Assembly (NCBI GenBank): GCA_037379345.1
Contig: CM074519.1
Location: 35,366,103 to 35,430,102 of the forward strand
DNA: 64,000 nt
Source: Perna viridis
Lineage: Eukaryota
Direction: 5' to 3'
Part shown: positions 10,081 through 38,700 of the stretch, piece after piece
Layout: every line of letters begins with the position of its first letter
Position numbering within the stretch: position 1 is the stretch's first letter
The notes under the pieces: model-generated
Told to the model about the DNA's origin: nothing
Databases searched by the model: none
The model's input: only the letters and a program-made list of their open reading frames with translations
Translations under genes and position numbers: made by a program

Positions 10081-10249
10081 CAATAAAAGCAATCTACGTA
10101 AAAATATTTTTGTAAGTAATATTATACTTTTACTTTCAGTTCATTTTGGTTTTTATCAAAACACTGGTCATCGAAATTAATTGTGTTCATTTCATCTTTC
10201 ATAACATATTGATTATCTATAAAAGTACCTCAACAAAATGTGATGTGTT

Positions 10250-11370
10250 TCGTGACGGGTTGTTCAAGAACGAAGAGATTTTTTTACAAATTATATTCAT
10301 CACCTTCATATCCTTCGTTTCAAATAAGTTTACTTCTGTATGAAAATAAAGTGGCAAGTTTCCCCTTTGAATGTAAAGGATTAGTAGCTTGCACATATAT
10401 TCATCTCTTACAGCAAGTTAGTCTTATTCCCATTCGTGGTCGTACGGCTGATTTTCACATTCTCAAAATAGAATGTGCTTTAGATGGTAGGATGTGAGTT
10501 CTTGTTTCATTCCGTCAGGGTAAAACAATAACTGCATTTTTTTAATTATTCGTTGGCTTTTCTTTCGGCAAGTCCCATTTATATCAATTTGGTCCAATAG
10601 AATTTTTTCTCACATGTTACAAATGAAAGTGACCAATAGATAGGGTCCTTTGCTACATAATGTATGCCCTCCTGTTTTATTTCTTCGATTTATTTATCTG
10701 ATGGCCATTCAGCACTTGGTCTTGGCCATCTGAACTTCTTTTTGAAGGGGACATGACTCTCTATAAGGGGTGCCGTGTCCATGCTGATCTCCTTTCCTGC
10801 TATTTCGGGATGACTCAAGGTTAATGTAGCAGCTGGTGATGATGATAATGTTTTAGTATCAATAAACTTCATATTTTCCGAGGATCGATTTACCGCCTCT
10901 CCAACTAAAGTTTTGAACCATCGCTTCACATTGATTGGTAAAATATAATCATCGATAGTCAAACAACAAGGTCCTTCATTTAGTCACCGTTCATTCCCTT
11001 TTCTCATTGTATTTCCTAGATATATAGAGTTTTTCCCCACGGGGGCTGGTGGCAATTCGTAGCAAGTTATTTCTACGTCTTGTTTTTGCTCATTATATCT
11101 AAAATATGATGGTGGTGTTGATGATGTCCATTGCAGCCGACCCGCGTCCAAAACTACACTGTAATCGAACTCGTCCGCTCGTTTTTCTTTTAGATGTGAA
11201 TAGTAACTCCCAACATTCAGTGGTTGTGTCTTGAATTGTGGATCCCTTTGATGAACAAAAGTTAGAATATCATGAACAATTGGTTTAACAAATTCAACAT
11301 TTTTCCTCGTCTCATCTTGTGTCATTTTTATTTGCCTCTAATAATAACGATTCAACATTTGGTTATCCAT
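10250..11370 (-). pseudogene. cGAS-like receptor (Mab-21) pseudogene, copy 1
   Basis: Colinear with 17327-18454 (MDNQMLNRYY, GSYYSHLKEKRADEFDYSVVL, EISMDTAP, LTSYHLK). Nonsense codons at 11338-11340, 10984-10986 and 10690-10692; +2 frameshift in an A-run at ~10603-10608; further downstream stops; a ~165-bp deletion removes the native stop codon. Confidence 0.93.
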
Positions 11371-11416
11371 ACTGGTGACTTTTTCCGTTATGCAATAATG
11401 TATCGTTTTAGGTTTC

Positions 11417-11471
11417 TTATATATGTGAATTTCCAAAAGGTTCATGTTTATTTTAAGAAGAGGTACTTTCC
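11417..11471 (-). promoter_or_regulatory. Putative cGLR copy 1 core promoter (TATA plus two kB-like 10-mers)
   Basis: Minus strand reads GGAAAGTACC (11462-11471), GGAAATTCAC (11425-11434), ATATATAA (11417-11424). A similar layout occurs in copies 2 and 3. Confidence 0.5.
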
Positions 11472-11549
11472 TATTGTGTAAACATTGCCCTACTTCGAAT
11501 GTTCCAGTAACAATGAAACTGGCATATCAGTTAAAATTCAAGAATATAT

Positions 11550-11885
11550 ATATATAGAAGGATCTGAAAAAATTCCCAAACGATGTTAGAACTGTCAAAT
11601 TTGCGATACATTCCGATTACATTATCTTCCCTGTATCAATTTGATCCTATGGAGCTACACACTCTGAGACGTTTAAACTACACCCCAACTCTAGAATCGA
11701 TAAAAATTGGGCGTTTCCTCAGCGGAATTCGAACCCCTTCTCTTCTCTGACATCTATGCCAACAAGGCCTGCACTCCGACGCTCAAGACCACTCGACCAA
11801 CTAGGCTATACAAAAATATGGTTTTCGTTAACCGAGTGATACTTCCTCGTAAGTAAATCTAGAGCGCGAACATTATAAAAAGGAC
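11550..11885 (-). mobile_element. tRNA-related (SINE-like) repeat upstream of cGLR copy 1
   Basis: Minus strand has A-box-like TGGTCGAGTGG (~11790-11800) and B-box-like GGTTCGAATTCC (~11724-11735). Absent from the paralogous position in copy 2; related sequence at 31400-31570. Confidence 0.6.
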
Positions 11886-12131
11886 AATATTTAAGTGATT
11901 AACTGTGATCTCAGTTTTCGGAAACTCATTTTCGACATGTAATAATACATTAGTTGACATCTAATGTAAACCTGTGGTTTAATATTTAAGAATGCAAGCT
12001 AGATTTGTCAATACATTGTTGTCAATAAATGTCGCTTTTGAAAATGTTACAAATAATTTTGTTCTTGAATAGACAGGTATTGTGGTGCACAAGAACCCCG
12101 TGACCAGAACAGTCCAAATAGAGATATAATG

Positions 12132-12159
12132 TTTCTACTTTCACTGTCACTTTCATTTT
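12132..12159 (-). promoter_or_regulatory. ISRE/IRF-E-like motif upstream of cGLR copy 1
   Basis: Minus strand AAAATGAAAGTGACAGTGAAAGTAGAAA; related motifs at 14018-14043, 18963-18985 and 28889-28908. Confidence 0.4.
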
Positions 12160-12289
12160 ATGTTTTAAAAAGGTTACTCTTTTAATGAAAGTACTCTTTT
12201 TTGATAAGAAAGTGTCTGTTGTGTCTTAGTAAAGCATTTCCTCTCAAGCTAATCCAATTTTCGAATATTCTCTCACAAAAAAAGAATGA

Positions 12290-12436
12290 AAGAGTAATCA
12301 ATGGAACCAAGGTTCTAGCGGTAATCAACCGAATGTACTCCAGGGACAAAGAACAGGCGCGGAAAAAAGATATACACAACAAAGAACATAAAGTAACTAT
12401 AATAATACATACAAAGTAACAAAGGCAAATGAGCAA
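12290..12436 (-). repeat. Dispersed repeat, copy 3 (partial)
   Basis: Matches 11-157; absent from the paralogous region 19100-19150. Confidence 0.85.
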
Positions 12437-15199: not shown

Positions 15200-15797
15200 T
15201 CTAAGTAACATGATATCTCCATAGATGGTCTCCTTCCTTTCATACAAAAACCTCTTGGACTTCATCACATTAGAACCAAACTATATTCTATACCTCTCAC
15301 TCTACTACACTCCCTTTACAAAATAAGTCTTGACACACCTGTTTCTGACCCCACCTCATCATTTTACATACTTGTTGCCATCATTTTGGATATTGGTTTC
15401 CACAGACTCTTTACACCAGTTTGTGTGAAAAGTCAAGATGAAGAAAAACGATCATTTCTTCCACTACCATTTGTCAACAAAGGTATAGATGCAGTTAATT
15501 TGGCTAACATCCTCCATCACAAAAACGTCACCACCAAAATTCCCCCGTATTTCAAATACAAATCCATACCAATTATTTCATATTCATATACTTCACCCAT
15601 TGCATCCAAAATTTTCAATTATAAAAGGCTCTTGCAGAACCTCGAGATTGAGGATTCGAGGCTAAACCACCTGACTGTTCTTGCAAAAACTCTCCATTCA
15701 AATATGGTCCTTCTGGTCACGTCATTACGGGAGATTTAACCATCGTCGAAAACGAATCTCTGCGTAATATCCTTTCTAAAGGTCCCAAGTACCGTGA
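15200..15797 (+). mobile_element. Penelope-like element fragment B
   Basis: FVNKGIDAVNLANILH..PIISYSYTSPIASKIFNYK..CSC..GHVITGDL..LSKGPKYR, homologous to fragment A. Confidence 0.7.
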
Positions 15798-16735
15798 CAA
15801 TAAAATTCCTGACAATATTCACATCTTCATGTGGTAATCTAACACCCATTGAGTTTCATAAAAATCTTGCCAGTGGTTTCGGAGGAGTTGTGGGCAACAC
15901 ATCAGTGGCATCAGATCAAGTTGTGCTGAAAAATTCCAAAGTTCCAACCGTCATTATTTCTACAATTTTTGTTCAAACATAAATTCCTGACAGTATGAAC
16001 ATTTCCATATGGTAATTTGACACTCCACTGAGTTTCATAACAATCTTGCAAATCGTTAAGTCGAAGTTTTGCAAAAAAATAATGACTTAGTTCAGCAGCC
16101 ATCATTTCTATATTTTATGTCCAAACATAAATTACTGACAGTGTACACATCTACATGTGGTTATATTACATCCCACATAGTTTCATAACAATTCCACAAG
16201 CTGCTTAGGTCTCACTAACCACTTCTAACGTTTCAATTACTTTACTTGTTAAAAAAGTAATTTTCAGTCTCACTGTGAATTCCCAGGACAAATGACATCT
16301 TAAAGCTGCATACCATTGCGAAGCTTGGAAAATAAGGCTTCCAAAATCATTATGCTAATGGTACGATGATAGTAGAAATTCTTCACAAAATTTACTTCAA
16401 TAAATAATAAAGAAATCCACATTTTTACCTGTTCTGCTAACTGACAGCATGGAGGCAAATTACTCACACATGTAAACAATATTCATACACTTTTGTAGTT
16501 AATTACATATATGATTTTAAAGTACACATTCTCAGCTTTTAATCATAATGCACACAAATAATGCACTTACAATGCATGTGTCTAGGTTCAGTGTGTGTTG
16601 GTACTACATAGGGAGTGGCCATTTGACCCGGAAGTGGTTAGTGAGACCTTAGAAAATAGTTAAGACAGACAGGCCGACGGACAGATGAACAGACGAACTG
16701 ACAGACTGATTGAAATCTGTATAACCCTCAAATTA
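15795..16735. mobile_element. Pearl/HINE-like element (paralog of 3635-4390), interrupted by a MITE
   Basis: Colinear with ~3940-4390. Confidence 0.6.
16208..16648. mobile_element. PIF/Harbinger (Tourist-like) MITE, 441 bp
   Basis: Perfect 18-bp TIR GGTCTCACTAACCACTTC / GAAGTGGTTAGTGAGACC; TTA duplication at 16205-16207 and 16649-16651; single TTA at the empty paralogous site 4284-4286. Confidence 0.9.
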
Positions 16736-17326
16736 CTTACTCAAAGCACTTGTCATTTTAGTAATATAGAAACGTACTTCAAACGTTTAGTATCAAGTCA
16801 TGAAACAAAATTTTATAGAGTGTTATTGTTTTTATTTATTTCTTTAGACAAAAACTTCGATACATTGTATAATGGGATAACGATGAGGTTAAGAAGCTAA
16901 TAAAGCTACAATTAGTTTACCCAAGTTGACAAATATTAGCTAAAAAACAATTTGCAAAGACAAATATGGAACTATACTTAAGCTTAAATTTATCAAATGC
17001 GAAACTCGATTAAAGCATTCAACGTAAAAAGAATTTCTGTAAGTGATATTGTACTTTTACTTTCTATTCATTTTGGTTTTTATTAAAACATTGGTTATCT
17101 AAAATATTTTGTTCATTTCATCTTTCACAACATATAGATTATCTATAAATGTAAATCAACAAAGTATGATGCGCTTATGCATTAATTTAATTTCAATATG
17201 CACACAGAAGATCAATACCATGTCAATAATGAAAACCGTAACTTAAGTGAATAAGTATTACACATGTTCCGCGCGAACTCCAATGATATTACGTGCTCGT
17301 AATAATCCAGACAAACTGTCGCTCCA

Positions 17327-18454
17327 TTATTCCAAATATCGTGACGGGTTGTTCAAGAAATTAAAGATATTTTGGCAAATTATATTCATCACCTCTCTAT
17401 CCTTCGTTTCAAATAAATTTACTCCTGTATGAAAATAAAGTGGCAAGTTTCCCCTTTGAATGAAACGAATCAGTAGTTGGCACATAGATTCAATTCTGTT
17501 TGCGAGTTGGTCTTGTTCCCATTCGTGGTCGTACGGATGATTTTCACATTCCCAAAAAAGAATGTTCTTTAGGTGGTACGATGTGAGTTCTTGTTTCATT
17601 CCGTTCGGGCAAAACAGTTCCCGTAATTTTTTCATTATCCGTTGACTTTTCTTTCGGCATGTCCCATTTATATCAATACGATCCAACAGAATTTTCTCAC
17701 ATGTTACAAATGAAAGTGACCAATAGATAGGATCTTTAGCTACCTCGTGTATCCCCTCGCGTTTTATTTCGTCTATTTTAAGCTGGGTAGGCCATCTAGC
17801 ACTAGATCTTGGCCACCCAAACTCATTTTTGAAGGGTAGATGTCCTTCTATAAGGGGTGCCAAATCAATACTGATTTCTTTCCCTGCAATTCCTGGATGA
17901 CGCAGAGTCAATGTGGCAGCTGGGGATTCTGACAGTCGCTTAGCATCAATATATTGCATTTTTGCCGATGGTCTGTTTACTGCTTCCCCCAATAAAGATT
18001 TGAATCTGCGTTTAACTTTAATCGGTATAATAAAACCATCGATAGTTAAACATCCTGGTCCTTCATTCAGTCTCTGTTTATTCCAGTTTTCCATTTCTCC
18101 GAGGTACGTTAAGTGTTTACCTACTGGCCCTGGTGGCAAAGCATAAGATCTTTTTTCTACATCACGTTTCTGTTCATTATATCCGAAATACGCTGGTTTT
18201 GTTGATGATATCCAATGCAGCCGACCCACATCCAACACTACACTGTAATCGAACTCGTCCGCTCGTTTTACTTTAAGATGTGAATAGTAACTCCCAACAT
18301 TCAGTGGTTGTGTCTTAAAACGTGGATCCCTTTGATGAACATAAGATAGAATATCCTGAACAACTGGCATAACAAAGTCAACATTTTTTCTCGTCTCATC
18401 TTGTGTCATTTTTACTTGGCTCTCATAATAACGATTTAGCATTAGGTTATCCAT
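17327..18454 (-). CDS. cGLR: cGAS-like receptor (Mab-21 family nucleotidyltransferase), intact, single coding exon, 375 aa
   Basis: VGSYYSHLKVKRADEFDYSVVL fits the G-S..[DE]h[DE]h NTase motif; third carboxylate in ISIDLAP; Mab-21 C-lobe WSLSFVTCEKILL, CRKK..RIMKKLR, LTSYHLKNILFW, LPLYF...NLF. The ORF track extends to 18541, but the MDN start at 18454 is shared by all three copies and lies downstream of a TATA element. AATAAA on the minus strand at 17079-17084. Confidence 0.95.
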   Translation of the reverse strand: MDNLMLNRYYESQVKMTQDETRKNVDFVMPVVQDILSYVHQRDPRFKTQPLNVGSYYSHLKVKRADEFDYSVVLDVGRLHWISSTKPAYFGYNEQKRDVEKRSYALPPGPVGKHLTYLGEMENWNKQRLNEGPGCLTIDGFIIPIKVKRRFKSLLGEAVNRPSAKMQYIDAKRLSESPAATLTLRHPGIAGKEISIDLAPLIEGHLPFKNEFGWPRSSARWPTQLKIDEIKREGIHEVAKDPIYWSLSFVTCEKILLDRIDINGTCRKKSQRIMKKLRELFCPNGMKQELTSYHLKNILFWECENHPYDHEWEQDQLANRIESMCQLLIRFIQRGNLPLYFHTGVNLFETKDREVMNIICQNIFNFLNNPSRYLE

Positions 18455-18501
18455 GCTGGTGGCTTTTCCCGTTATGCAATACTGTATCGTTTTAGGCTCC
18501 G

Positions 18502-18566
18502 TATATATATATGTGTGTGTGAATTTTCTGAAAGTTTTCATATTATTTTTAGAAGAGGTGCTTTCC
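18502..18566 (-). promoter_or_regulatory. Putative core promoter of the intact cGLR
   Basis: Minus strand GGAAAGCACC (18557-18566), GAAAATTCAC (18519-18528) and a (TA)n TATA element (18502-18512) about 50 nt before the ATG. Confidence 0.5.
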
Positions 18567-18962
18567 TATTGTGTATTATATTCATTGTCCGACTTCGAAC
18601 ATTCTAGTAACAATTAATGTTTCTTATCAGTTGAAATTCAAGAGTACATTAATATTTTGGGTATATATGAATATTCAAGCACTAAATAATAATACTGTAA
18701 TTTCGATGAGAAGTTCATTAATTACAATTTATTAAATATGTCAAAAGGGAGGTAATACATTTAAGTGATGAAACTCGTTTTCGACATGTATTAATATTCA
18801 AGTTGACATCTAAACCTGCAGTTTAATGTTTAAGAATGTAAAGTAGATTAGTCAATACAACTTGTGTCAATAAATGTCGCTTTTGAAAATGTAGCAAATA
18901 TTTGTGTTCATGAATAGCACGTAATGTAATGCACCAGAACCACGTGACCAGAACCTATAATG

Positions 18963-18985
18963 TTTCTACTTTCACATTCACTTTT
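18963..18985 (-). promoter_or_regulatory. ISRE/IRF-E-like motif upstream of the intact cGLR
   Basis: Minus strand AAAAGTGAATGTGAAAGTAGAAA, positionally conserved with 12132-12159. Confidence 0.4.
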
Positions 18986-21312
18986 GTTTTATAAAGGAAT
19001 TACTCTTTTAATGGAAGTACTCTTTTTCATAAGAAAATGTTTGTTGTGCCTTAGTAAAGCATTTGCTCTCAAGCTAACCAAACAATCGAATATCCTCAGA
19101 AAAAAAAGAATGAGAAAAAAATTAAACGGAAATTCAAAAAAGAAAAATGATATTTGAATTGCTTTGGTGTTTTGGGGGAAAATATGTTGGGGTTTCCAAG
19201 AATGAGAAAAAATTTTCACCAGCAATATAAAATAAAAACTGTGTTTTACTCTCTACTCTAAATATCTTTAACCGTATATTTGAAGGGGGAAATGTTTTAT
19301 ATCTGTCGCGGAAAAAATTAATTGGTAGAAAAATTTTTGTATTTATTTATCATATCAGTTAAAAGATACTTAAGAAATAGTTGTGTGTTACATTTCCTGT
19401 AAAGAAATTTCGACATTTTAACATCAATAAGTCAATCTACCCGGTATAACATTTTGTAAAAAAGATCTGTCTGACACATGTTAGTAGTTTCCAACTAAGT
19501 TTTTGCATGGCCCGACTTCGTTCTTTTAGTAAAACAACAAATGTAGTTTGCAATTATCTTGCTAACCATTTGGAATTTAAACAAACATTATTTCATATGC
19601 CCGACAAATGTTTGTGTACACTTGTGTGAATTCCAGATGGTAAGCAAAATCATTGAAACGTCGAGAGAAATTAAACGTGAGGCCAGTCTTGTATCATAGA
19701 TTTCCCAAAGCGGCTGTAAAAAATGATTTAATTTTCGTAGGAAAAGGGGGGGGGGCATTGTAAAGGTTACAAGCCCAGCTTTTCTTTTCTCTTTCTACCA
19801 ATAATTTTTTTTCGCGAGAGATATAAAACATTTTTTCCCTTCAAATATACGGTTAAAGCTACTTAAAGGTCAGCGCTTTATGAATGAATACTATAAAATA
19901 CTATAAAGTCCGAAGTCCAATTTCATTCATTCTGTATTCAGCAGTTTTCATATAGGCACAATCAAGCCCCAGGCCAATGCAGCTTTGAGTATGATACTCA
20001 ATATAATGACAAGTATGGAGTCGAGTATGAAAAAGATGGACATCGGCATTGATCAAAAGTTTGAATACATAAGACAAGAAATTTTAGCTGTATCAGCAAG
20101 AGTACGGACACTAGAAAGTGCTATTGCGGACTTTCGTGTGAACATTTCTGATTGCGAGTCAAGCTGTCAGGGGGTTAGCAATCTGTTTTCTATAAAACTG
20201 AGAAAAAATATAAAGAATGCTGAATTACAGATTAAAACGAACACTCGTACCTTGATCCATCAAGATACTAGAATTAAAGAGATAGAGAGGTAACCTGTCT
20301 TACAGCCAGTTATACAATATGCCGCTGAGTCTAAAGAAATTAAGAAACTGAAAGCTGATGTTCTTGATCTGAAATGTCGATCAATGAAGTACAACTTGAT
20401 ATTTACAGGTCTGTACCGCAAAAAAGATGAGGACACCGAGTCTTCAATGTGTAGTTTTCTGTATAACGAGCTTGGTATTAAACACCACCTTGAAATTGGG
20501 AACGTGCATCAATTCAAAGCTCCACATGGTGATAGAAGAAGACCTCCCATTGTGGCTAGATTCCTCTATTGGACAGATCTGGAATATGTTCTAAGTTGCG
20601 CCGACATACTTAGAGGTAAACCATATGGTATAAAAGAACAGTTCCCGCAAGAAATTGAACAGAGACGAAAAGATCTGTATCCGGTAATGAAACAGGCAAA
20701 AAGAGGCAATAGGCAAGTTACCATGGTTCGTGACAAGCTCTTTATAGACAATGTATTATATGTCCCAGATGAAGCAGTTAACGATCCAACTGCTGATAGA
20801 CTAAACAATAGCCATGCAAATCATCAGACCTCTCCAAAGGCTCCGTCCGTTACTGATACACCACCAAGCAAACGACAAAGGCATGGACCTTCTCCTCAGC
20901 ATTCAGAGGGAAGAGCTGGACATACCTAGGGAGTCGGTGCAAAGGGACAACCAGATAAAAATGTTCCATAAAAATAAAATTGTAAATAATTATGGTATTG
21001 ATGACCTGAAATGCTTGTTTTTAAATGTTTGTGGCATAAAAAGATTGTTATCACCAGATTTTAATGATTTAGTTTGTAAACATGATATTTGCATTTTTGT
21101 AGAAACAAAATTAACAGACCTAGATATTTTAAACGTACCAGAGGTTTACGAGAATGTCACCAAAAACCGAAAGAAATTCAAAAGAGCATCGGGATGAATA
21201 ATCGTAATTTTCAAAACATTCTTCAATCTAAAATTTTACAAAAATTCTTATATAACATTAGTGGTTGATTTCAATGCGAAAACTGAATCATTATCAGATT
21301 TTGTAATACCTG

Positions 21313-29497: not shown

Positions 29498-29687
29498 GAA
29501 CAATTAAGAACAAATGTTAAATATGTGTTGACCGTTTCTAATCATCTGATACCCGAATTGGCTACTCACACTGATTTTTTTTTATTATTATTTTGTTGTT
29601 TTTTTTATATGCGTTTTTAAAGTCTTTTCATCATTTCCCTCTGAAATATTACTTTATCTATCTACACCATAAATGACGTTTCTCTCT

Positions 29688-30809
29688 TCACAAAAAATGT
29701 GTTGGATTGTTTAAAAAGTCAAATGCATTCTGGCAGATTCTATTCAGTACTTCCTTATCCTTCGTTTCTAACAGATTCACTCCGATGTGGAAATAAAGCT
29801 CTAATTTCTTCCTTTGAATTGACCGTATAAGGCGTTCACACATTGATCTAACTCTCATCGCTAGTTTGTCCTGTGTCCAGTCCGAATCATCATGAAAATC
29901 TTCACATTTCCAAAACAGAATGTTCTTTAGATGATGGGACGTAAGTTCTTTTTTCATCCCACTCGGGTAAAATATATCCCGAAATCTCTTCATTATCTTT
30001 TCTTCCGGATTGTCCCGTTTGAATCAATGCAATCTAAGAGAATTTTCTCACAAGTCACAAATGCGAGTGACCAATAAATTGGATCTTTAGCTACCCCGTG
30101 TATCCCCTCACGTTTTATTTCTTCTATTTTCATCTTTGAAGGCCATCTTGTATTTGACCTTGGCCACCCTAACGCATCGACGAAGGGAGTGTGTCCCTCT
30201 GTAAGGGGTGTCAAGTCAATATTAATATCTTTCCCTGGTATTCCAGGATGACGCAGAGTTAATGTAGCGACTGGTGCATGAATCCGATAGCCTTTTGGCA
30301 TTAACACATTTCATATTAGCCGAAGGTCTATTTACTGCCTCTCCAAATAAAGCTGTGAATCTTCGTTTCACTTTTATTGATAAAATAAAACCGTCGACAG
30401 TCAAGCAATCAGATCCTTCATTTAATCTCTGTTCGTCCCATTCTGGAATATTTCCTATGTGTATTGTGCCTGTTGGGGCAGGTGGTAGTTCGCATGAAGT
30501 TCTTTCTATGTCACATTTCCGTTCATTATATCCAAAATACGCAGCTGGACTCGGTTTTGATGCCCATTGCAACCGACCCACGTCCAACAATACACTGTAA
30601 ACGACCTCGTCCGCTTGTTTTACCTTAAGATGAGAGTAATAGCTGCCAACATTCAGCGGTTGGATCTTAAAACGTGGATCCCTTTGGTGAACATATTAAG
30701 ATAGAATGTCCTGTACAATTGGTATAGCAATGCTAACATTTTTCCTCGTCTCATCAAGTATCATCTTCACCTTGTTCTTATAAAAACGATTTAACATTTG
30801 GTTATCCAT
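29688..30809 (-). pseudogene. cGAS-like receptor (Mab-21) pseudogene, copy 3
   Basis: MDNQMLNRFY start; in-frame TAA at 30696-30698; GSYYSHLKVKQADEVVYSV (DEFD changed to DEVV); frameshifts near 30275 and 29995; C-terminal fragments ELTSHHLKNILFW and FLNNPTHFL. Confidence 0.93.
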
Positions 30810-30875
30810 GTTCAAAAATAGTTTTGATCTAGTATAACTCTCAGGCTACTAATGATTAATTTTGTTTTGATTTTC

Positions 30876-30929
30876 TTTTATATACGTTTTCAAAAAGTTT
30901 CCACAATATTTTTAGACAAGGTACTTCCC
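30876..30929 (-). promoter_or_regulatory. Putative cGLR copy 3 core promoter
   Basis: Minus strand GGGAAGTACC (30920-30929) and TATATAAAA (30876-30884). Confidence 0.5.
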
Positions 30930-31399
30930 AATCGTGGTAAAATTTTCTGTACACCCTGCTTATCAGTTCGTGCGAGCTGACAAGCAGTCCGTATTGATTC
31001 TCTGATTACGTAAAAGAATCTGTCAATACAATGATGCCTTATAGGAATATGGTATGAACACTTTATAAACAGAGCCACAGATACGTTAGAGGAATCAGTC
31101 AGACATGAAACCTTTGTATATTACCTTCAGACGTAAGGATGTCTTCCAGGAATCTGCCAGACATATTAGTATACGAACTACTTTGGATTAATTCGCGATA
31201 CGATACGGACTGATTCCTCCGAGGAACTTGTCAGCGTGACAATCTGCCAGGTGCTATCAGTTCTAACGTCAAAGGGACGTTATTCATTTTTGTTGAAAGG
31301 GTTTTGTTTCTTCAGATTTTTAGTTATCTTCATAACTTTATGGTGAAGTCAAAATTTAAATATATATCGAAGTATCAGAATTTGACGACTCTAGTTGCT

Positions 31400-31570
31400 G
31401 CACTGCTCCATAGGTTAAATTGATACAGGGTAGATAAAGGAAGCACAGGAGGGTCTGAAAAATGCCCAACGATGTTAGAACTGTCAAATTTGCGAAGCAG
31501 ATTTTTGGTCGTTCTGTCCTGCATAAAGTTCAGCGCCCTAGACCATTCGGCCAGCTAGGCCATATAATAA
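31400..31570. mobile_element. Rearranged copy of the tRNA-related repeat at 11550-11885
   Basis: Shares AACGATGTTAGAACTGTCAAATTTGCGA and AGACCA.TCG.CCA.CTAGGC; one segment is inverted relative to the other copy. Confidence 0.55.
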
Positions 31571-32169
31571 TGTAGCTAAAACATGCAAAACCCAGGCAGT
31601 GGGTGGCACATGACAAATTTTGTTTTCAAAATAGCTTTCCTCCATTTCACATCTCAAATGCATCCTTTCTCTAAGTTGAATGTTTGTTTTTGATTAACTA
31701 CAACAATTAAAAAGAAATAAATTACACAGAAAGCATTATAATTCATTGAAAAAATGTAGATAACTCTTTAATTTGAAAAAAAAATTGGTTGCTTTGTTAA
31801 GGAAATTTTCAATCATTTTCAGAGCCATCCATGGTCCATTTAAAACAAACTTTATATTATTTGAAATACATATACTATATGCATTACATTAAAATTCAGT
31901 GTGATAAAATTTACCTTGCGCCATCAATATCATAGGATCTGCCCGATTATTACATGGACAGCCTCTTGTATTAATTATTTACTGAACAATTGGTTTTAAG
32001 ACTATTGTATGTATCCATGTTTATGTACAAACGGTGTGTGTTGAAATATTGTTTTTGTTTTTGTTGTTTGGCGATGGAAAATGTCGAAATCACTGTAGAG
32101 TTGAAGTTCTTGTCCATTTCTGATCTCTATATTGCTGGTAGCCTAAAAATAAAAAGACAACAATATTAA

Positions 32170-34686: not shown

Positions 34687-35709
34687 ATGTTTCGTTTCGG
34701 TCACAAGAAGACTGACAAAGAAAAGAAGGAGAAGGATGAGAAGAAAAAAGAGAAAAAGGAAAAGAAAGATAAAAAAGAGAAACAAAGAGAACCAATGACT
34801 CAAGAAGAAATGAGTAGACTTGATGAAGTAAAGAAGGGGATATTCAGACGCGTAAGCGATAGGGATAAAAATAAAAGATCATCAAGTAAGTATGTATCAC
34901 AGGGGGATGTTGTACCAAGAGATAGCAGTGATAGTAGTATTAGTTCTGGTGCTAAGAGTCCAAGTTTAGAAGAACTTGCTAAACCAACTGCCCGACCAGT
35001 ACCTGAGCCAAGAAAGAATCCGCCTGCTCCTGCAACAAAACCTAAAAGCATTTTAAAGGCTAAGTCCAGTAACCCACAGACAATAAGCAAAGAAATGGAT
35101 CCTCAAAAAGTTCAAGAGAATACAATTAGTAACTGTCTTAATGCTCATTTGATTAATGAAAGCAATGGTGATGTCAATCATGCAGTAAATGGAGATTCAT
35201 CCCCACAACTTCCAGTGTCACCTCCCAAATCCCCTCCAGAAACACCAGAAAAGTCCTTTAAAGCTAAGCTTTCTTTGCCTGACATCGTTCCTCCAAAACC
35301 ACCAAGAATCAGAGAACTAGTTCTTCATAGACAACCAACAGGAGGATTTGGCTTCAGCTTGAGAAAAGGTATAATTACTGAAAAAGGGGGTGGTGACAGT
35401 CAAATAACTAAACATTATGTGATATTTGCTGAACCAGGTAGTGGGCCAAGAGCTCCACAGACAGGGCTTATTCCTGGGGATCGTTTAGTAGAGGTGAATG
35501 GTGTTAATGTTCAGAATATGACAAGAGAAGAAGTGGTTGAATTGATACAGAAGTCAGATGATATGCTGAAGGTTTGTGTGCAGCCCATACCAGAGCTTAT
35601 AGAGTTGAGTGTTCGGCCAGCTTTAGATGGTGGACAGGTAGAAATTCAAGATGATGTTGTCAAAGGAGGAACCCTGAAGAGAAGCTCTAGTCTCCGCTAC
35701 AAAAAAGGG
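34687..35709 (+). CDS. MYO18A: Unconventional myosin XVIII, coding exon 1 (KE-rich region, Pro/Ser-rich linker, PDZ domain)
   Basis: KKEKDEKKKEKKEKKDKKEK...MTQEEMSRLDEVKKG; PDZ GGFGFSLR..IFAEPG..GLIPGDRLVEVNG..VQPIPELIELS; phase-0 donor GTTGGT at 35710. Confidence 0.92.
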
Positions 35710-38700
35710 GTTGGTATATGATGTAATTGTATAATCATAGTGATACATTTATAGTCCATTTCAGAGTAAAACAAAGCTAGTCTTACATTTTATTCTTGCA
35801 GTACCAAATAAGGTGACCTAAAGGTTACATGCTTGTTAGTACCTTAAAGTACATATACAACATGTATACAGTTTACTGTGCCATTAATTGGTACACACAT
35901 GATGTGTACATAGATGTAATTTTGCTTTTGTACTTTCTATTACTATGTGTGAATTGTGACATGTACATGTATTTTTTACATCAAAAACTTTAAATGAATC
36001 AGGATCTAAAAAAAATACAAGGAAATTGTGCAAATCTTAAGGATAAAAATAAATGTTCAAATTGAAACTGTATTCTATTATTCAACAAAACTACTGGGTA
36101 CAGTGAAATCTGCTGTTCAAAATACATGTAGTGTGGAGTTTTGCAGTAGGTTTTTACAACTGTACTATCAGGCACATCTACAGTGTTCAATCTAGAAATT
36201 GCTCACAGGAGTCGTCGTGGCTGAAGCAACTTGTCAGAGGGGACATGGAAATATGGGGTCAATAAAAAAAAATAACCTCTATCCACAATATAGTGACCTG
36301 TACCAGAAAAGGTGTCATTAAACCAAAACAGATTGGTGCTATCATAGATGATTTATGTGGTCATGGTGGTGGAAAGAAATAATTTGATACAATGTTACAA
36401 ATTGAAATTTGAAAAAAATGGTGTTCTGAAATTGAAACACCAAACAGTTACATGTAAGGTATTCTTTCTTTATTTGTACCAATAATTGTCTTCCTTCAGC
36501 ATCTGTATTAACTTGGCAATTGGAAGCCATCAAAGTTTAATTTTGCACTGGTATGGCTGTCACTGGCACTTGTACATGTACAAAAAATGTATCTATCAAT
36601 AGTCGGTCCCTCTCAACTCTGAACTGGTATGTTTTTTTATTAGACACGCCTCAAATGGAACTTCCGGTTTAAAGATGGCATCCGGATTGAGGCAAATTAA
36701 ATTTTTTTTTTCTGTCCGGCAGATAATTGTTTGGTCTATTAGATTTTGTTAGGTTACCAGACCAAATGTCCGACAGGTTGAAAAATCGATTTTGCCAGGT
36801 CTGTCATCCTAACCCTTACATTCTTGTAAAATTGTACATTCAATACATGTACCAATATCCAGTACTGTTGATCAGACTTTCTTTTAATTGACTTCATGTA
36901 CATGTATTAGTATGCTTGACATGTAATTACAATATACATATACAGTGTATGGCATTAATTATAGGATTATTAAATACTAATTACATGTGCATCATCATAT
37001 ACATGTAACGTTTAGTACCTGTCATTTTGTCCTTGATATTTAGAATACATAGGATGTATACATGTACATGAACGTACTTATCCATATTAAACAAATATAT
37101 AGTTTTTTGAAAGTAGATATCAGTTTATTATAGTTAAATTCTAGTTAACCCGATCTAATGCCTGTCATTATTGACACATTTAAAGAGATCAAATCACAAG
37201 TAATTATATTCATGCAATATACTATAATTGTGTAACTTTGCTATTAGGTAGTACATTAAAGTGTCATGGTGAAGGCCCATGTACAACAAGTACACATGCC
37301 ATTTTCTGTTAATCATATGAAATTATGATTGAATAATTATTGACCAGTTCTGTGCATCAAGTCCTGATGATGGTTTTCCATACATGTGCATTACTCATTA
37401 TTGAAAAAATACATATACAGGAATCTGTTTTTTTTTACTCGAATATTTACATATACAGGTATACATGTACATGTATGTAAACATGTTAGTGTATATGTAT
37501 GGAAAGAATGGTAAGAACTTTTAATAATAATGTGCATGTAAGTTTTCGAATACCTCTTTGACAACTCCCCCATAGTACTGGGTCATTTTTAAACAGGTGG
37601 TAATATATCACTTGGTGTGAAAGGTGACACCTTGTTACCACATACTACATATCATATTAATTAATTTTACCCCTACAGACCAAAAGAAAATGCTTCTATG
37701 CTTTTAATCTGTTTTAGCAACTTATTGTTTTTGAAACTGATTTTCCTATTCAGATTCATCAATCTATTTGTGTAGTATAAATACAGTTTCTGTTGTATTG
37801 GTACCATCACATTTTGTCAGTAAAATATGTTTTGAAAAAGTCCCTCTACTTGGAATTAGACAGATAAGAAATGAAACAAGATAAGCTTTAGAATATAAAG
37901 TTTATCTTTCCACCTGATGATTTAAAGTTTTATTTTATCCTCAAAACCTTGTGTTAACTTTGTGTATTATAGATGAACTTTAGGTTAGAGGATTATGGCA
38001 ATAAATTAACGGTTTATGTTACACAAGGAAGTATAAAATAAATATCATGTATAACATGCTATAACTGCATAATGTTGATAAAAGACAAAGAATAGTGATC
38101 CAGGATTGATCATGGGTACATAGTTAAGAAAAAGACACTGGAGAGTGAGAGTGAAATTTATGCACCGTTGTACATGTAATATAGCTGTTTCTTGGTCCAA
38201 GTAGGACTAAAGAAGGCAGAAGGATTTAGATAATTAAGATAGTTCTGACTTGAATAACCCATTTCCTTTTTAAAGTGCAGAGGGGTGTATCAAAATTAAA
38301 GATGGACACTGCTGTAATCCATACATGTACATGTATATTCACACCTAAGTTGATTAAGGTTTGGTTTATTAATTTTGAATGGTGTTTAGTACATGTACAT
38401 GTACTACAGATCTCTACATGTACATGTACTACAGATCTCTGCATAATGTAGAAATACAATATGTATTACTGGGCTAACACATCATAAGAACAAGCTTGAA
38501 TTGAATTACAAATATTTAGAAAGGAAACGGTGTATTTTGATTATCTCAATTTGTTAATCATTTGGAGTCTTCTCTTTTAGAATTTTAGGAAAATATTTTC
38601 ATTGAATTAAAAAAATTAAAGATTCAGCATCTTGCAGAAAATTTAATAAAGTATATAGGTATAGCATTTAGAATTTACCTGTATACATACAATGTATGGA

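What the first reader, a model, noticed from the sequence alone, without database searches (positions are those of the whole stretch)
17327..18454. Intact stand-alone cGAS-like receptor with a complete catalytic site and an unusual N-lobe insertion
Seen: a 375-aa single-exon Mab-21/NTase protein with GS, E-x-D (ADEFD) and third D (ISIDLAP) all present. It has no zinc-ribbon insertion between CEKILL and CRKK and no fused domains. A long Pro/Gly/Trp-containing stretch follows the catalytic strand (GRLHWISSTKPAYFGYNEQKRDVEKRSYALPPGPVGKH...NEGPGCLTIDG) and is retained in both paralogs. Known: cGLRs are animal pattern-recognition enzymes that make cyclic dinucleotides for STING signalling and are expanded in bivalves. 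Inference: this is a catalytically competent innate immune sensor with unknown ligand and product, and the insertion may define a distinct subfamily. This is my best candidate for an undescribed system in the window.
Basis: partly seen in the sequence, partly recalled or inferred. Interest (0 to 1): 0.85.

Follow-up and report, generated by a model that had tools for sequence, protein, structure and literature searches.

The report
Intact, expressed mussel cGAS-like receptor gene
This is a real, transcribed, single-exon gene for a cGAS-like enzyme with a complete catalytic site in a mussel-like bivalve, but it is an ordinary member of an already catalogued, untested family branch, and its "unusual insertion" is a variable-length loop shared by that whole branch.

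Summary
Window 17327-18454 (minus strand) encodes a 375-aa Mab-21 nucleotidyltransferase with G54-S55, E67/D69 and D197, no zinc ribbon and no fused domain. Four stranded RNA-seq runs cover it as one unspliced transcript. The AlphaFold2 model (pLDDT 90.5) superposes on cGAS at Z about 35.

Three corrections:
- Both paralogs in the window are pseudogenes, so this is the genome's only intact copy of the clade.
- The N-lobe "insertion" is not peculiar to this gene. Its Pro/Gly motif is shared with the coral dsRNA sensor Sp-cGLR1. The truly extra part is a beta-hairpin of about 20 residues, in a loop that ranges from 10 to 57 residues across relatives.
- The gene belongs to a conserved clade that databases auto-name "mab-21-like 3": Mytilus 70-72% identity, scallops 52-55%, chiton 41%, lungfish and amphibians about 35%. 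In my tree amniote MAB21L3 falls in the same clade but has lost the active site. The developmental MAB21L1/2 ortholog lies on another chromosome.

Most likely function (inferred, not shown): a nucleic-acid-activated cyclic-dinucleotide synthase that signals to STING. Ligand and product are unknown. No clade member appears among the proteins tested in the 2023 cGLR screen preprint.

Verdict: new member of a known kind, modest interest.

The parts
17327..18454 (-). Coding sequence of the 375-aa cGAS-like receptor (stop codon 17327-17329). It starts at the ATG at 18454, in the context accAGCATGG.
   Evidence: ORF list and translation. Homologs of 370-376 aa align end to end with the 375-aa model. 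RNA coverage stops before the upstream ATG at 18541.
17060..18480 (-). Approximate mRNA: one exon of about 1.4 kb. The 5' end lies near 18456-18500 and the 3' end near 17060, with weak read-through to about 16910.
   Evidence: Stranded RNA-seq depth of 10-100x appears on one orientation only between about 16910 and 18460. Depth is zero from 18571 upward and there are no joints. Both ends are approximate.
18502..18511 (-). TATA-like run (TATATATATA) 48-57 nt upstream of the ATG. A candidate core promoter.
   Evidence: Sequence. Its position fits the RNA 5' end. Function not tested.
17079..17084 (-). AATAAA poly(A) signal 242 nt after the stop. An ATTAAA also starts at 17191.
   Evidence: Pattern search. 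Coverage falls in the bin 16910-17060.
17681..18289 (-). Mab-21 nucleotidyltransferase domain (residues 56-258).
   Evidence: Pfam PF03281, E 6.4e-19.
17366..17659 (-). Mab-21 C-terminal helical domain (residues 266-363). It carries S292-Y293-H294-x-K296, the counterpart of SYHVK in cGAS.
   Evidence: Pfam PF20266, E 2e-21. Profile alignment to pig cGAS.
18290..18295 (-). Codons G54-S55 (the GS motif of the activation loop).
   Evidence: Translation. G54 is invariant and S55 nearly invariant in 41 homologs.
18248..18256 (-). Codons E67-F68-D69 (the first two metal-binding acidic residues).
   Evidence: Translation. Invariant in 41 homologs.
17864..17866 (-). Codon D197 (the third catalytic acidic residue, in ISIDL).
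   Evidence: Translation. Invariant in 41 homologs.
18026..18211 (-). Expanded N-lobe segment (residues 82-143). The truly extra beta-hairpin is about residues 84-105 (window 18140-18205). The LPPGPVG motif (106-112) and the strand and helix at 116-126 have counterparts in Sp-cGLR1.
   Evidence: The AF2 model is confident here (pLDDT 85-92) with strands 90-93, 98-101 and 116-118 and helix 122-126. Gaps against Sp-cGLR1 and cGAS fall here. Loop length is 34 aa here against 10-57 aa in relatives. The segment alone has no Pfam or PDB match.
10248..11370 (-). Pseudogene copy A: 81% nucleotide identity to the intact CDS, six in-frame stops (codons 11, 128, 226, 301, 314, 316) and a 2-nt insertion. 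It shares about 600 nt of upstream flank and the 3' flank.
29685..30809 (-). Pseudogene copy C: 75% nucleotide identity, frameshifting indels (+4 at nt 530, -7 at nt 809, and others) and D69V. No flank similarity was detected.

Best explanation
The gene encodes a functional cGAS-like receptor (cGLR) of the 'MAB21L3-like' branch of the Mab-21 family.

Shown:
- It is intact, transcribed as one exon and conserved.
- It has the cGAS fold, with the GS loop and all three catalytic acidic residues in place.

Inferred:
- At rest it is an inactive monomer. Binding of a cytosolic nucleic acid along the basic platform, formed by the N-terminal spine helix and the CRKK helix, reorders the GS activation loop.
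- The enzyme then joins two NTPs into a cyclic dinucleotide that activates a STING receptor.
- I favour double-stranded RNA over DNA as ligand. There is no zinc ribbon, and the closest solved relative is the dsRNA sensor Sp-cGLR1.
- The product is probably not 2'3'-cGAMP, because the guanine-reading arginine of cGAS (R376, numbering from memory) is a serine here (S246).
- The expanded beta-hairpin lengthens the loop between the strands that correspond to human cGAS R236 and K254/R255, the secondary DNA and nucleosome contact surface. It most likely alters ligand contacts or self-association there. It does not touch the active site.

The two dead tandem copies fit the birth-and-death turnover usual for immune gene families.
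For: - Domains and motifs. Invariance of the catalytic residues in 41 homologs.
- Only 4 conservative departures at 112 conserved columns.
- dN 0.20-0.22 with dS saturated (above 1.5) against the M. galloprovincialis ortholog.
- Strand-specific expression in 4 RNA runs, unspliced.
- AF2 pLDDT 90.5, pTM 0.88.
- VIA-align Z 33-35, rmsd 2.2-2.5 A over 320-336 residues to mouse and human cGAS.
- The best sequence match among solved structures is Sp-cGLR1 (8GJY), E 1e-28 for the single sequence and 1.7e-51 for the family profile, aligned end to end. Sp-cGLR1 is dsRNA-activated and makes 3'3'-cUA (PMC9980059).
- No zinc ribbon; W-R-L-S-F of cGAS is W-S-L-S-F here; E253, K275 and S292-Y293-H294-K296 are conserved.
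- pI 8.96, in the range that PMC9980059 associates with nucleic-acid-sensing cGLRs.
- The genome holds at least one STING ligand-binding-domain exon (31 bits, above the cut-off).
- It holds at least 37 Mab-21 matches.
- Tandem pseudogenes.
Against: - There is no biochemical evidence at all. An intact active site does not prove activity. PMC9980059 lists human Mab21L1/2 among proteins with complete putative active sites, yet no nucleotide product is known for them.
- The clade includes vertebrate MAB21L3, whose one reported role is developmental (cited in PMC4897736).
- The preceding residue is V-G-S, not the [QT]GS of the census motif.
- Ligand preference is argued only from the missing zinc ribbon and a relative at 27-33% identity. 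The oyster Cv-cGLR1 senses dsDNA.
- The STING evidence is one weak exon hit.
- RNA run metadata are hidden, so no immune induction is shown.
Confidence: 0.6

Rival explanations
1. It is a MAB21L3-type protein with a non-immune role, for example in cell fate or epithelial differentiation. It acts through binding to protein or RNA, and the conserved acidic residues serve structure or a non-cyclase activity.
For: - In the tree the gene falls in a 41-row clade (SH-aLRT 96) that also holds lynx and bird MAB21L3.
- NCBI names nearly all close homologs 'mab-21-like 3'.
- An Atlas feature search with the scallop homolog gives chordate MAB21L3 clusters first.
- MAB21L3 acts downstream of Notch in Xenopus multiciliate cells and ionocytes (cited in PMC4897736).
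Against: - Amniote MAB21L3 has lost the active site (GS to DT/GI, E67 to Q, D69 to L, D197 to E) and sits on a long stem of 1.37 changes per site. The window gene and its molluscan, hemichordate, lungfish and amphibian relatives keep all of these residues.
- That pattern suggests the amniote state is derived.
- Identity to amniote MAB21L3 is only 25-26%.
- Tandem duplication with decay, and many amino-acid polymorphisms, are more typical of immune genes than of developmental regulators.
Confidence: 0.2
2. It is an active nucleotidyltransferase but not a nucleic-acid sensor of the cGAS type. It could be constitutively active, activated by a protein or small-molecule ligand through the expanded hairpin, or make a linear or otherwise non-STING product.
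For: - In the 2023 screen some active cGLRs, such as Sp-cGLR2, have unknown ligands (PMC9980059).
- The expanded hairpin creates a surface absent from characterised cGLRs. Its sequence evolves faster (dN 0.35 against 0.16-0.22 elsewhere), while its aromatic core (W81, Y/F90, W124) is conserved.
Against: - The basic pI of 8.96 and the conserved basic CRKK helix fit nucleic-acid binding.
- The closest solved relative is a dsRNA sensor.
Confidence: 0.15
3. It is a decaying relic: the last copy of a dying cluster, still transcribed but no longer under selection in this species.
For: - Two of the three tandem copies are dead.
- 11 of the 12 listed coding SNPs are non-synonymous.
- Mytilus and scallops keep several intact copies, whereas this genome has one.
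Against: - The frame is open over 375 codons.
- Only 4 conservative changes occur at 112 conserved columns, fewer than in several Mytilus paralogs.
- All catalytic residues are intact.
- 11 of 12 is not significantly above the roughly 73% expected by chance (my estimate, p about 0.12), and the SNP list is truncated.
Confidence: 0.05

Closest known systems
Sp-cGLR1 of the coral Stylophora pistillata (PDB 8GJY; dsRNA-activated, makes 3'3'-cUA)
   Same: - It is the best sequence match among solved structures, aligned over residues 3-373 (E 1e-28 single sequence, 1.7e-51 family profile).
- It has the same GS / ExD / D site and no zinc ribbon.
- It shares the L-x-x-P-P-x-G motif after the catalytic strand and the SYHLK motif.
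   Different: - Identity is only 27-33%.
- The window protein has about 21-23 more residues between the catalytic strand and the third Asp: 15 in the hairpin around residues 82-103 and 6 around 125-130.
- The position equivalent to cGAS R376 is S here and C in Sp-cGLR1.
- Ligand and product are untested here.
Vertebrate cGAS (for example mouse 4K96, human 6CT9)
   Same: - The bilobed fold matches: Z 33-35, rmsd 2.2-2.5 A over 320-336 residues.
- The catalytic triad, E253 (cGAS E383), K275 (K414) and S292-Y293 (S435-Y436) are conserved. The cGAS numbers are from memory.
   Different: - Identity is about 20-24%.
- There is no zinc ribbon (a 9-residue gap) and no disordered basic N-terminal tail.
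- R376 is replaced by S.
- About 29-36 extra residues sit in the hairpin loop between the strands of R236 and K254.
- It is not a cGAS ortholog.
MAB21L3 of amniotes (lynx P0204, birds P0122)
   Same: It falls in the same broad clade in my tree (41 rows, SH-aLRT 96), separate from MAB21L1/2. NCBI uses the same name for the mollusc homologs.
   Different: - Amniote MAB21L3 has lost the GS motif and all three acidic residues.
- Identity is 25-26%.
- Its exact sister relation is unresolved because of a long branch and support of 81-90.
MAB21L1/MAB21L2 (developmental; PDB 5EOG)
   Same: Same fold and same Pfam domains. These are also single-exon genes (PMC4897736).
   Different: - This genome has its own true ortholog on contig C10 (670 bits, E 6.5e-201 to human MAB21L1).
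- The window protein is 28% identical to that ortholog.
- MAB21L1/2 lack GS and the third Asp.
Cv-cGLR1 / Cg-cGLR1 of oysters (PDB 8GJW; dsDNA-activated, make 2'3'-cUA)
   Same: They are bivalve cGLRs with the same fold (Foldseek E 1e-16, TM 0.73-0.79).
   Different: The relation is much more distant: phmmer E 9e-9, C-terminal part only, 18% identity. They belong to a different branch of the family.

Membership tests
cGAS-like receptors (cGLR; Mab-21 family nucleotidyltransferases with an active site) | Mab-21 NTase core plus C-terminal helical domain, with the bilobed cGAS fold | tested here: met
   Pfam PF03281 and PF20266. AF2 pLDDT 90.5. Z about 35 to cGAS.
cGAS-like receptors (cGLR; Mab-21 family nucleotidyltransferases with an active site) | Active-site motif h[QT]GS ... 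[DE]h[DE]h ... h[DE]h (PMC9980059 methods) | tested here: met
   G54-S55, E67-F-D69-Y and I-D197-L are present and invariant in the clade. Two deviations: V53 replaces Q/T, and the spacer is 125 residues against the stated X50-90. Sp-cGLR1, an accepted member, has K at that position and by my count a spacer of about 102, so the motif is not applied strictly.
cGAS-like receptors (cGLR; Mab-21 family nucleotidyltransferases with an active site) | Ligand-dependent synthesis of a cyclic dinucleotide | not testable with these tools
   Needs recombinant protein and a nucleotide assay.
cGAS-like receptors (cGLR; Mab-21 family nucleotidyltransferases with an active site) | A STING receptor in the same genome | tested here: inconclusive
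   One exon-sized match to PF15009 on contig C2 (31 bits, above the cut-off, E 5.8e-5, with 1 stop inside the match). The gene model was not reconstructed.
cGAS proper (vertebrate-type DNA sensor) | Zinc ribbon H(X5)CC(X6)C between the EK-IL and CRK motifs | tested here: not met
   Only DRIDINGT lies between the two motifs. There is a 9-residue gap against pig cGAS.
cGAS proper (vertebrate-type DNA sensor) | Arg that reads the guanine base (human R376, numbering from memory) | tested here: not met
   W-S246-L-S-F here against W-R-L-S-F in cGAS.
MAB21L1/MAB21L2 developmental proteins | Very high conservation with the vertebrate proteins (orthology) | tested here: not met
   The true ortholog is elsewhere (L007, 670 bits to 5EOG). 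The window protein scores 81 bits to 5EOG. The two form separate clades with support 100.
MAB21L3 family (broad sense) | Groups with vertebrate MAB21L3 to the exclusion of MAB21L1/2 and other cGLR lines | tested here: inconclusive
   The quick ML tree places lynx and bird MAB21L3 in the same 41-row clade (SH-aLRT 96). However, cGAS, MB21D2, Sp-cGLR1 and Cv-cGLR1 could not be included, the amniote branch is long, and no AU test was run.
MAB21L3 family (broad sense) | Degenerate active site, as in amniote MAB21L3 | tested here: not met
   The window protein keeps GS/E/D/D. Lynx and birds have DT or GI / Q / L / E.

The most novel reading that the evidence does not exclude
The MAB21L3-like clade is an old bilaterian line of catalytically intact cGLRs. 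It is kept in molluscs, hemichordates, lungfish, amphibians and sturgeon, and degenerated only in amniote MAB21L3. Its length-variable beta-hairpin (10-57 residues, on the surface that is cGAS 'site B') would be a lineage-specific ligand-recognition or oligomerisation module. On this reading the mussel enzyme senses a ligand, or makes a product, different from every characterised cGLR.
Probability: 0.25. Interest if true: 0.55.

Novelty: new member of a known kind. Interest (0 to 1): 0.3.

Why it matters
Bivalves carry tens to hundreds of cGLRs, and only a handful have a known ligand and product, so one more intact gene is not news in itself.

What this analysis adds:
- This gene is the single surviving copy, in its genome, of a clade conserved across mussels and scallops, with relatives as far as lungfish and amphibians.
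- It is expressed, and its nearest solved relative is a dsRNA sensor that makes 3'3'-cUA.
- No member of the clade appears among the proteins tested in the 2023 screen preprint.

That makes it a reasonable, low-redundancy candidate for biochemical testing. The comparison also suggests that amniote MAB21L3 descends from an enzymatically intact ancestor, which bears on what MAB21L3 does in vertebrates.

Tried and rejected
- An exact-sequence look-up of the protein in public assemblies found nothing, so the 5' UTR could not be checked against transcript contigs.
- A full-text search for '8GJY' gave only irrelevant hits. I identified the entry instead by short-motif search in the screen's Table S3 and by the Foldseek titles.
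- The ESM Atlas could not read the window protein because the machine was busy. I used the scallop homolog P0029 instead.
- A third homolog search seeded with a sturgeon protein did not reach amniote MAB21L3. Those proteins came from cluster look-ups.
- The insertion segment alone (68 aa) has no Pfam or PDB match.
- Pairwise dN/dS is not usable as a ratio because dS is saturated.
- The bacterial promoter/terminator scan of the 3' region was irrelevant for a eukaryotic gene.
- Pfam found nothing in the ORFs at 15386-15736, 20384-20926 and 20814-21194. My first impression of a LINE element there is therefore unverified.
- Rejected: the 404-aa ORF from the ATG at 18541, because no RNA reaches it and homologs start at the MDN... 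position.
- Rejected: orthology to MAB21L1/2.
- Not done: a tree that includes cGAS, MB21D2, Sp-cGLR1 and Cv-cGLR1. Those sequences were available only as text in a supplement or in PDB alignments, and I did not type them in.
- Not done: complex prediction, because I make no claim that the protein binds a partner protein.
Full report
**1. What is in the sequence**

The only long ORF in the area runs on the minus strand from 18541 to 17327 (404 aa). Three lines support that model.
- Homologs of 370-376 aa align with it end to end from M-D-N.
- RNA coverage stops at about 18456-18500 and is zero from 18571 upward, so the ATG at 18541 is not transcribed.
- A TATATATATA run lies at 18511-18502, 48-57 nt upstream of the ATG.

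Pfam finds Mab-21 (6.4e-19, residues 56-258) and Mab-21_C (2e-21, residues 266-363) and nothing else. G54-S55, E67-F-D69 and D197 are present. The window contains no N, and base composition (about 33% GC) is uniform.

**2. It is expressed and unspliced**

Four raw-read RNA-seq runs of the same organism were laid on 15400-19900.
- Reads cover about 16910-18460 in one orientation only (first mate on +, none on -). In a usual stranded library this means RNA from the minus strand.
- Depth is about 10-20x in one run and 55-100x in another, at similar sequencing depth.
- No joints fall inside the gene.
- Coverage drops after the AATAAA at 17084.
- The M. galloprovincialis ortholog is likewise one uninterrupted 1122-nt gene.

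A pile-up of read ends at 18456 could be the transcription start or a 5'-UTR splice acceptor (...ccaccAG|C). I could not resolve which, because the loose-end rows were truncated and the reads tool is capped at one call. The adjacent block at 16155-16760 has high depth on both strands and many loose ends. It is a dispersed repeat, not part of the gene.

**3. The paralogs are dead**

A six-frame search of the whole 723-Mb genome finds only three loci of this type, all in the window. Codon-aware alignment gives the following.
- Copy A (10248-11370): 81% nucleotide identity, stops at codons 11, 128, 226, 301, 314 and 316, and a 2-nt insertion.
- Copy C (29685-30809): 75% nucleotide identity, indels of +4 and -7 nt among others, and D69V.
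- Copy A shares about 600 nt of upstream sequence and the 3' flank with the intact gene. Copy C shares only the CDS.

So this genome has one functional gene of the clade. The next best hits elsewhere are at most 30% identical.

**4. Fold and nearest solved relatives**

- AlphaFold2 with a 41-sequence alignment gives pLDDT 90.5 and pTM 0.88, with no segment below 50.
- VIA-align gives Z 33-35 and rmsd 2.2-2.5 A over 320-336 residues to mouse and human cGAS. About 40-50 residues have no counterpart.
- By sequence the best solved relative is 8GJY: E 1e-28 for the single sequence and 1.7e-51 for the family profile, aligned over 3-373.
- 8GJY is Sp-cGLR1 of Stylophora pistillata. It is a dsRNA-activated enzyme that makes 3'3'-cUA (PMC9980059).
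- Next come MAB21L1 (5EOG), cGAS, and only then the oyster dsDNA sensor Cv-cGLR1 (8GJW, E 9e-9).

**5. The 'insertion'**

The distance from E67 to D197 is 130 residues. It is 107 in Sp-cGLR1 (counted on the sequence) and about 94 in human cGAS (my knowledge of that sequence).

The profile alignment shows that the Pro/Gly motif is not inserted: family 'aLpspPvG' aligns to 'GLSEPPIG' of Sp-cGLR1. The extra material is 15 residues within about 82-103 and 6 around 125-130. Against pig cGAS the alignment breaks between family positions 83 and 145, which is 62 residues against 33.

In the model this region is ordered (pLDDT 85-92), with strand 79-81, a hairpin at 90-93 and 98-101, strand 116-118 and helix 122-126. 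The strand LDVGRLHW aligns to LEVPRIQL of cGAS. The hairpin therefore lengthens the loop between the strands that carry human cGAS R236 and K254/R255. That is the secondary DNA ('site B') and nucleosome-binding surface. This last identification is from my knowledge of cGAS and was not tested here.

Across 54 relatives the loop equivalent to residues 82-115 varies widely:

| Group | Loop length (aa) |
|---|---|
| MAB21L1/2 | 11 |
| Lungfish, amphibians, sturgeon | 12-20 |
| Amniote MAB21L3 | 29 |
| Mussels and scallops (divergent Mytilus paralogs included) | 32-35 |
| Chiton | 43 |
| Pinctada / Ruditapes group | 44-57 |

Within mussels and scallops W81, P110 and W124 are invariant or nearly so, while the hairpin surface varies. 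dN there is 0.35, against 0.16-0.22 elsewhere. The segment alone matches nothing in Pfam or the PDB.

Conclusion: this is a clade-wide, length-variable hairpin, not a peculiarity of this gene.

**6. Which family branch**

Close homologs:

| Relative | Identity |
|---|---|
| Mytilus species | 70-72% |
| Unnamed transcriptome and metagenome sequences | 57-69% |
| Scallops (Ylistrum, Mizuhopecten, Pecten) | 52-55% |
| Chiton | 41% |
| Hemichordates | 28-37% |
| Lungfish, salamander, caecilian, sturgeon | about 32-35% |

Nearly all are auto-named 'protein mab-21-like 3', and a few 'cGLR1'.

In ML trees (IQ-TREE quick, LG+C20):
- The window protein is sister to a Mytilus group (support 94).
- That pair sits inside a mytilid clade (97-98).
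- The mytilid clade sits inside a Mytilida + Pectinida clade (support 96 in the tree, 92 in that).
- With real amniote MAB21L3 (lynx, three birds) and vertebrate MAB21L2 added, all 'mab-21-like 3' lines form one 41-row clade (96). MAB21L1/2 plus the genome's own ortholog form another (100).
- That own ortholog (contig C10) scores 670 bits to human MAB21L1.

For MAB21L3 the answer is more nuanced. The gene shares a clade with it. However, amniote MAB21L3 sits on a stem of 1.37 changes per site and has lost the site entirely: GS to DT/GI, E to Q, D to L, D to E. Molluscan members, most hemichordate members, the lungfish and amphibian members and one of the two sturgeon members keep GS/E/D/D. PMC9980059 likewise states that Mab21L1/2/3 lack a predicted functional active site.

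Limits: characterised cGLRs and cGAS are not in my trees, because they had no usable sequence reference. The trees are 'quick' and no AU test was run.

**7. Constraint and polymorphism**

- The protein departs from the family consensus at 4 of 112 conserved columns: Y90F, V155L, W281F and L356M.
- Of 12 well-supported coding SNPs in the RNA reads, 11 change the amino acid: D2N, M29I, I82T, G188E, K209E, R353I, E354K, C360Y, F364V, F364L and N365K. Seven of the 12 fall in codons 353-365, six of them amino-acid-changing.
- I82T is fixed in all four runs, so the reference allele is private or an error.
- The list is truncated and 11 of 12 is not significant, so this is only a lead.

**8. Mechanism (inferred)**

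- The residues that hold the triphosphates and bases in cGAS are conserved: E253, K275 and S292-Y293-H294-K296.
- The guanine-reading Arg is S246 here. It is T or K in other bivalves and R in the lungfish and amphibian group.
- The pI is 8.96, and the CRKK helix is basic and conserved.
- There is no zinc ribbon, which in cGAS is associated with B-form DNA preference (my knowledge).

Together with the Sp-cGLR1 relationship, this favours an RNA-type ligand and a product other than 2'3'-cGAMP, signalling to STING. One STING ligand-binding-domain exon was found on C2. None of this is shown. No sequence carrying the clade's motifs appears in the table of proteins tested in the 2023 screen preprint.

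**9. Verdict**

The interpretation 'intact cGLR with unknown ligand and product' is reasonable. The claims of an unusual insertion, live paralogs and an undescribed system are not upheld.

It is a new member of a known kind, a sensible candidate for biochemistry, and of modest interest.

**10. Procedure notes**

The only typed letters were short motifs used to search a paper's supplement.

Noticed in passing
window 16155-16760: A block with very high RNA depth on both strands (up to about 275x), many loose read ends at 16206-16208, 16413, 16539 and 16649, and fixed differences from the reference. It behaves as a dispersed, transcribed repeat lying just 3' of the gene.
   Followed up: no
window 18210 (codon 82): The reference has ATA (Ile). 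All reads in all four RNA runs have ACA (Thr), as in the Mytilus homologs (W-T-T). The assembly allele is private or an error.
   Followed up: partly
window 17360-17397 (codons 353-365): A cluster of seven SNPs, six of them amino-acid-changing, in the last helix. Different alleles are heterozygous in different runs, so several haplotypes appear to segregate.
   Followed up: partly
window 18455-19054 versus 11371-12370 and 30810-31809: The upstream 600 nt of the intact gene matches copy A (79-80% identity with indels) but not copy C at blastn level. This check finds it shared only with copy A.
   Followed up: partly
window 19985-21197 (+): Three overlapping or adjacent ORFs (102, 181 and 127 aa) look like the start of a non-LTR retroelement, with a coiled-coil ORF1-like part and then a possible endonuclease start. 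Pfam gives no match for the two that were scanned, so this is unverified.
   Followed up: partly
window 34687-35721 (+): A 344-aa ORF with a Lys/Glu-rich N-terminus and a PDZ domain (PF00595, 3e-11).
   Followed up: partly
G000:C10:26290516-26291640 (locus L007:1462-2586, minus strand): The genome's true MAB21L1/2 ortholog is also a single open frame. It scores E 6.5e-201 to human MAB21L1.
   Followed up: yes
proteins P0204, P0122, P0255, P0256 versus P0073, P0210-P0214, P0077: Lungfish, salamanders and a caecilian carry several 'mab-21-like 3' paralogs with an intact GS/E/D/D site. Amniote MAB21L3 has lost it. One sturgeon copy (P0215) has also lost GS, while its paralog P0221 keeps it.
   Followed up: partly
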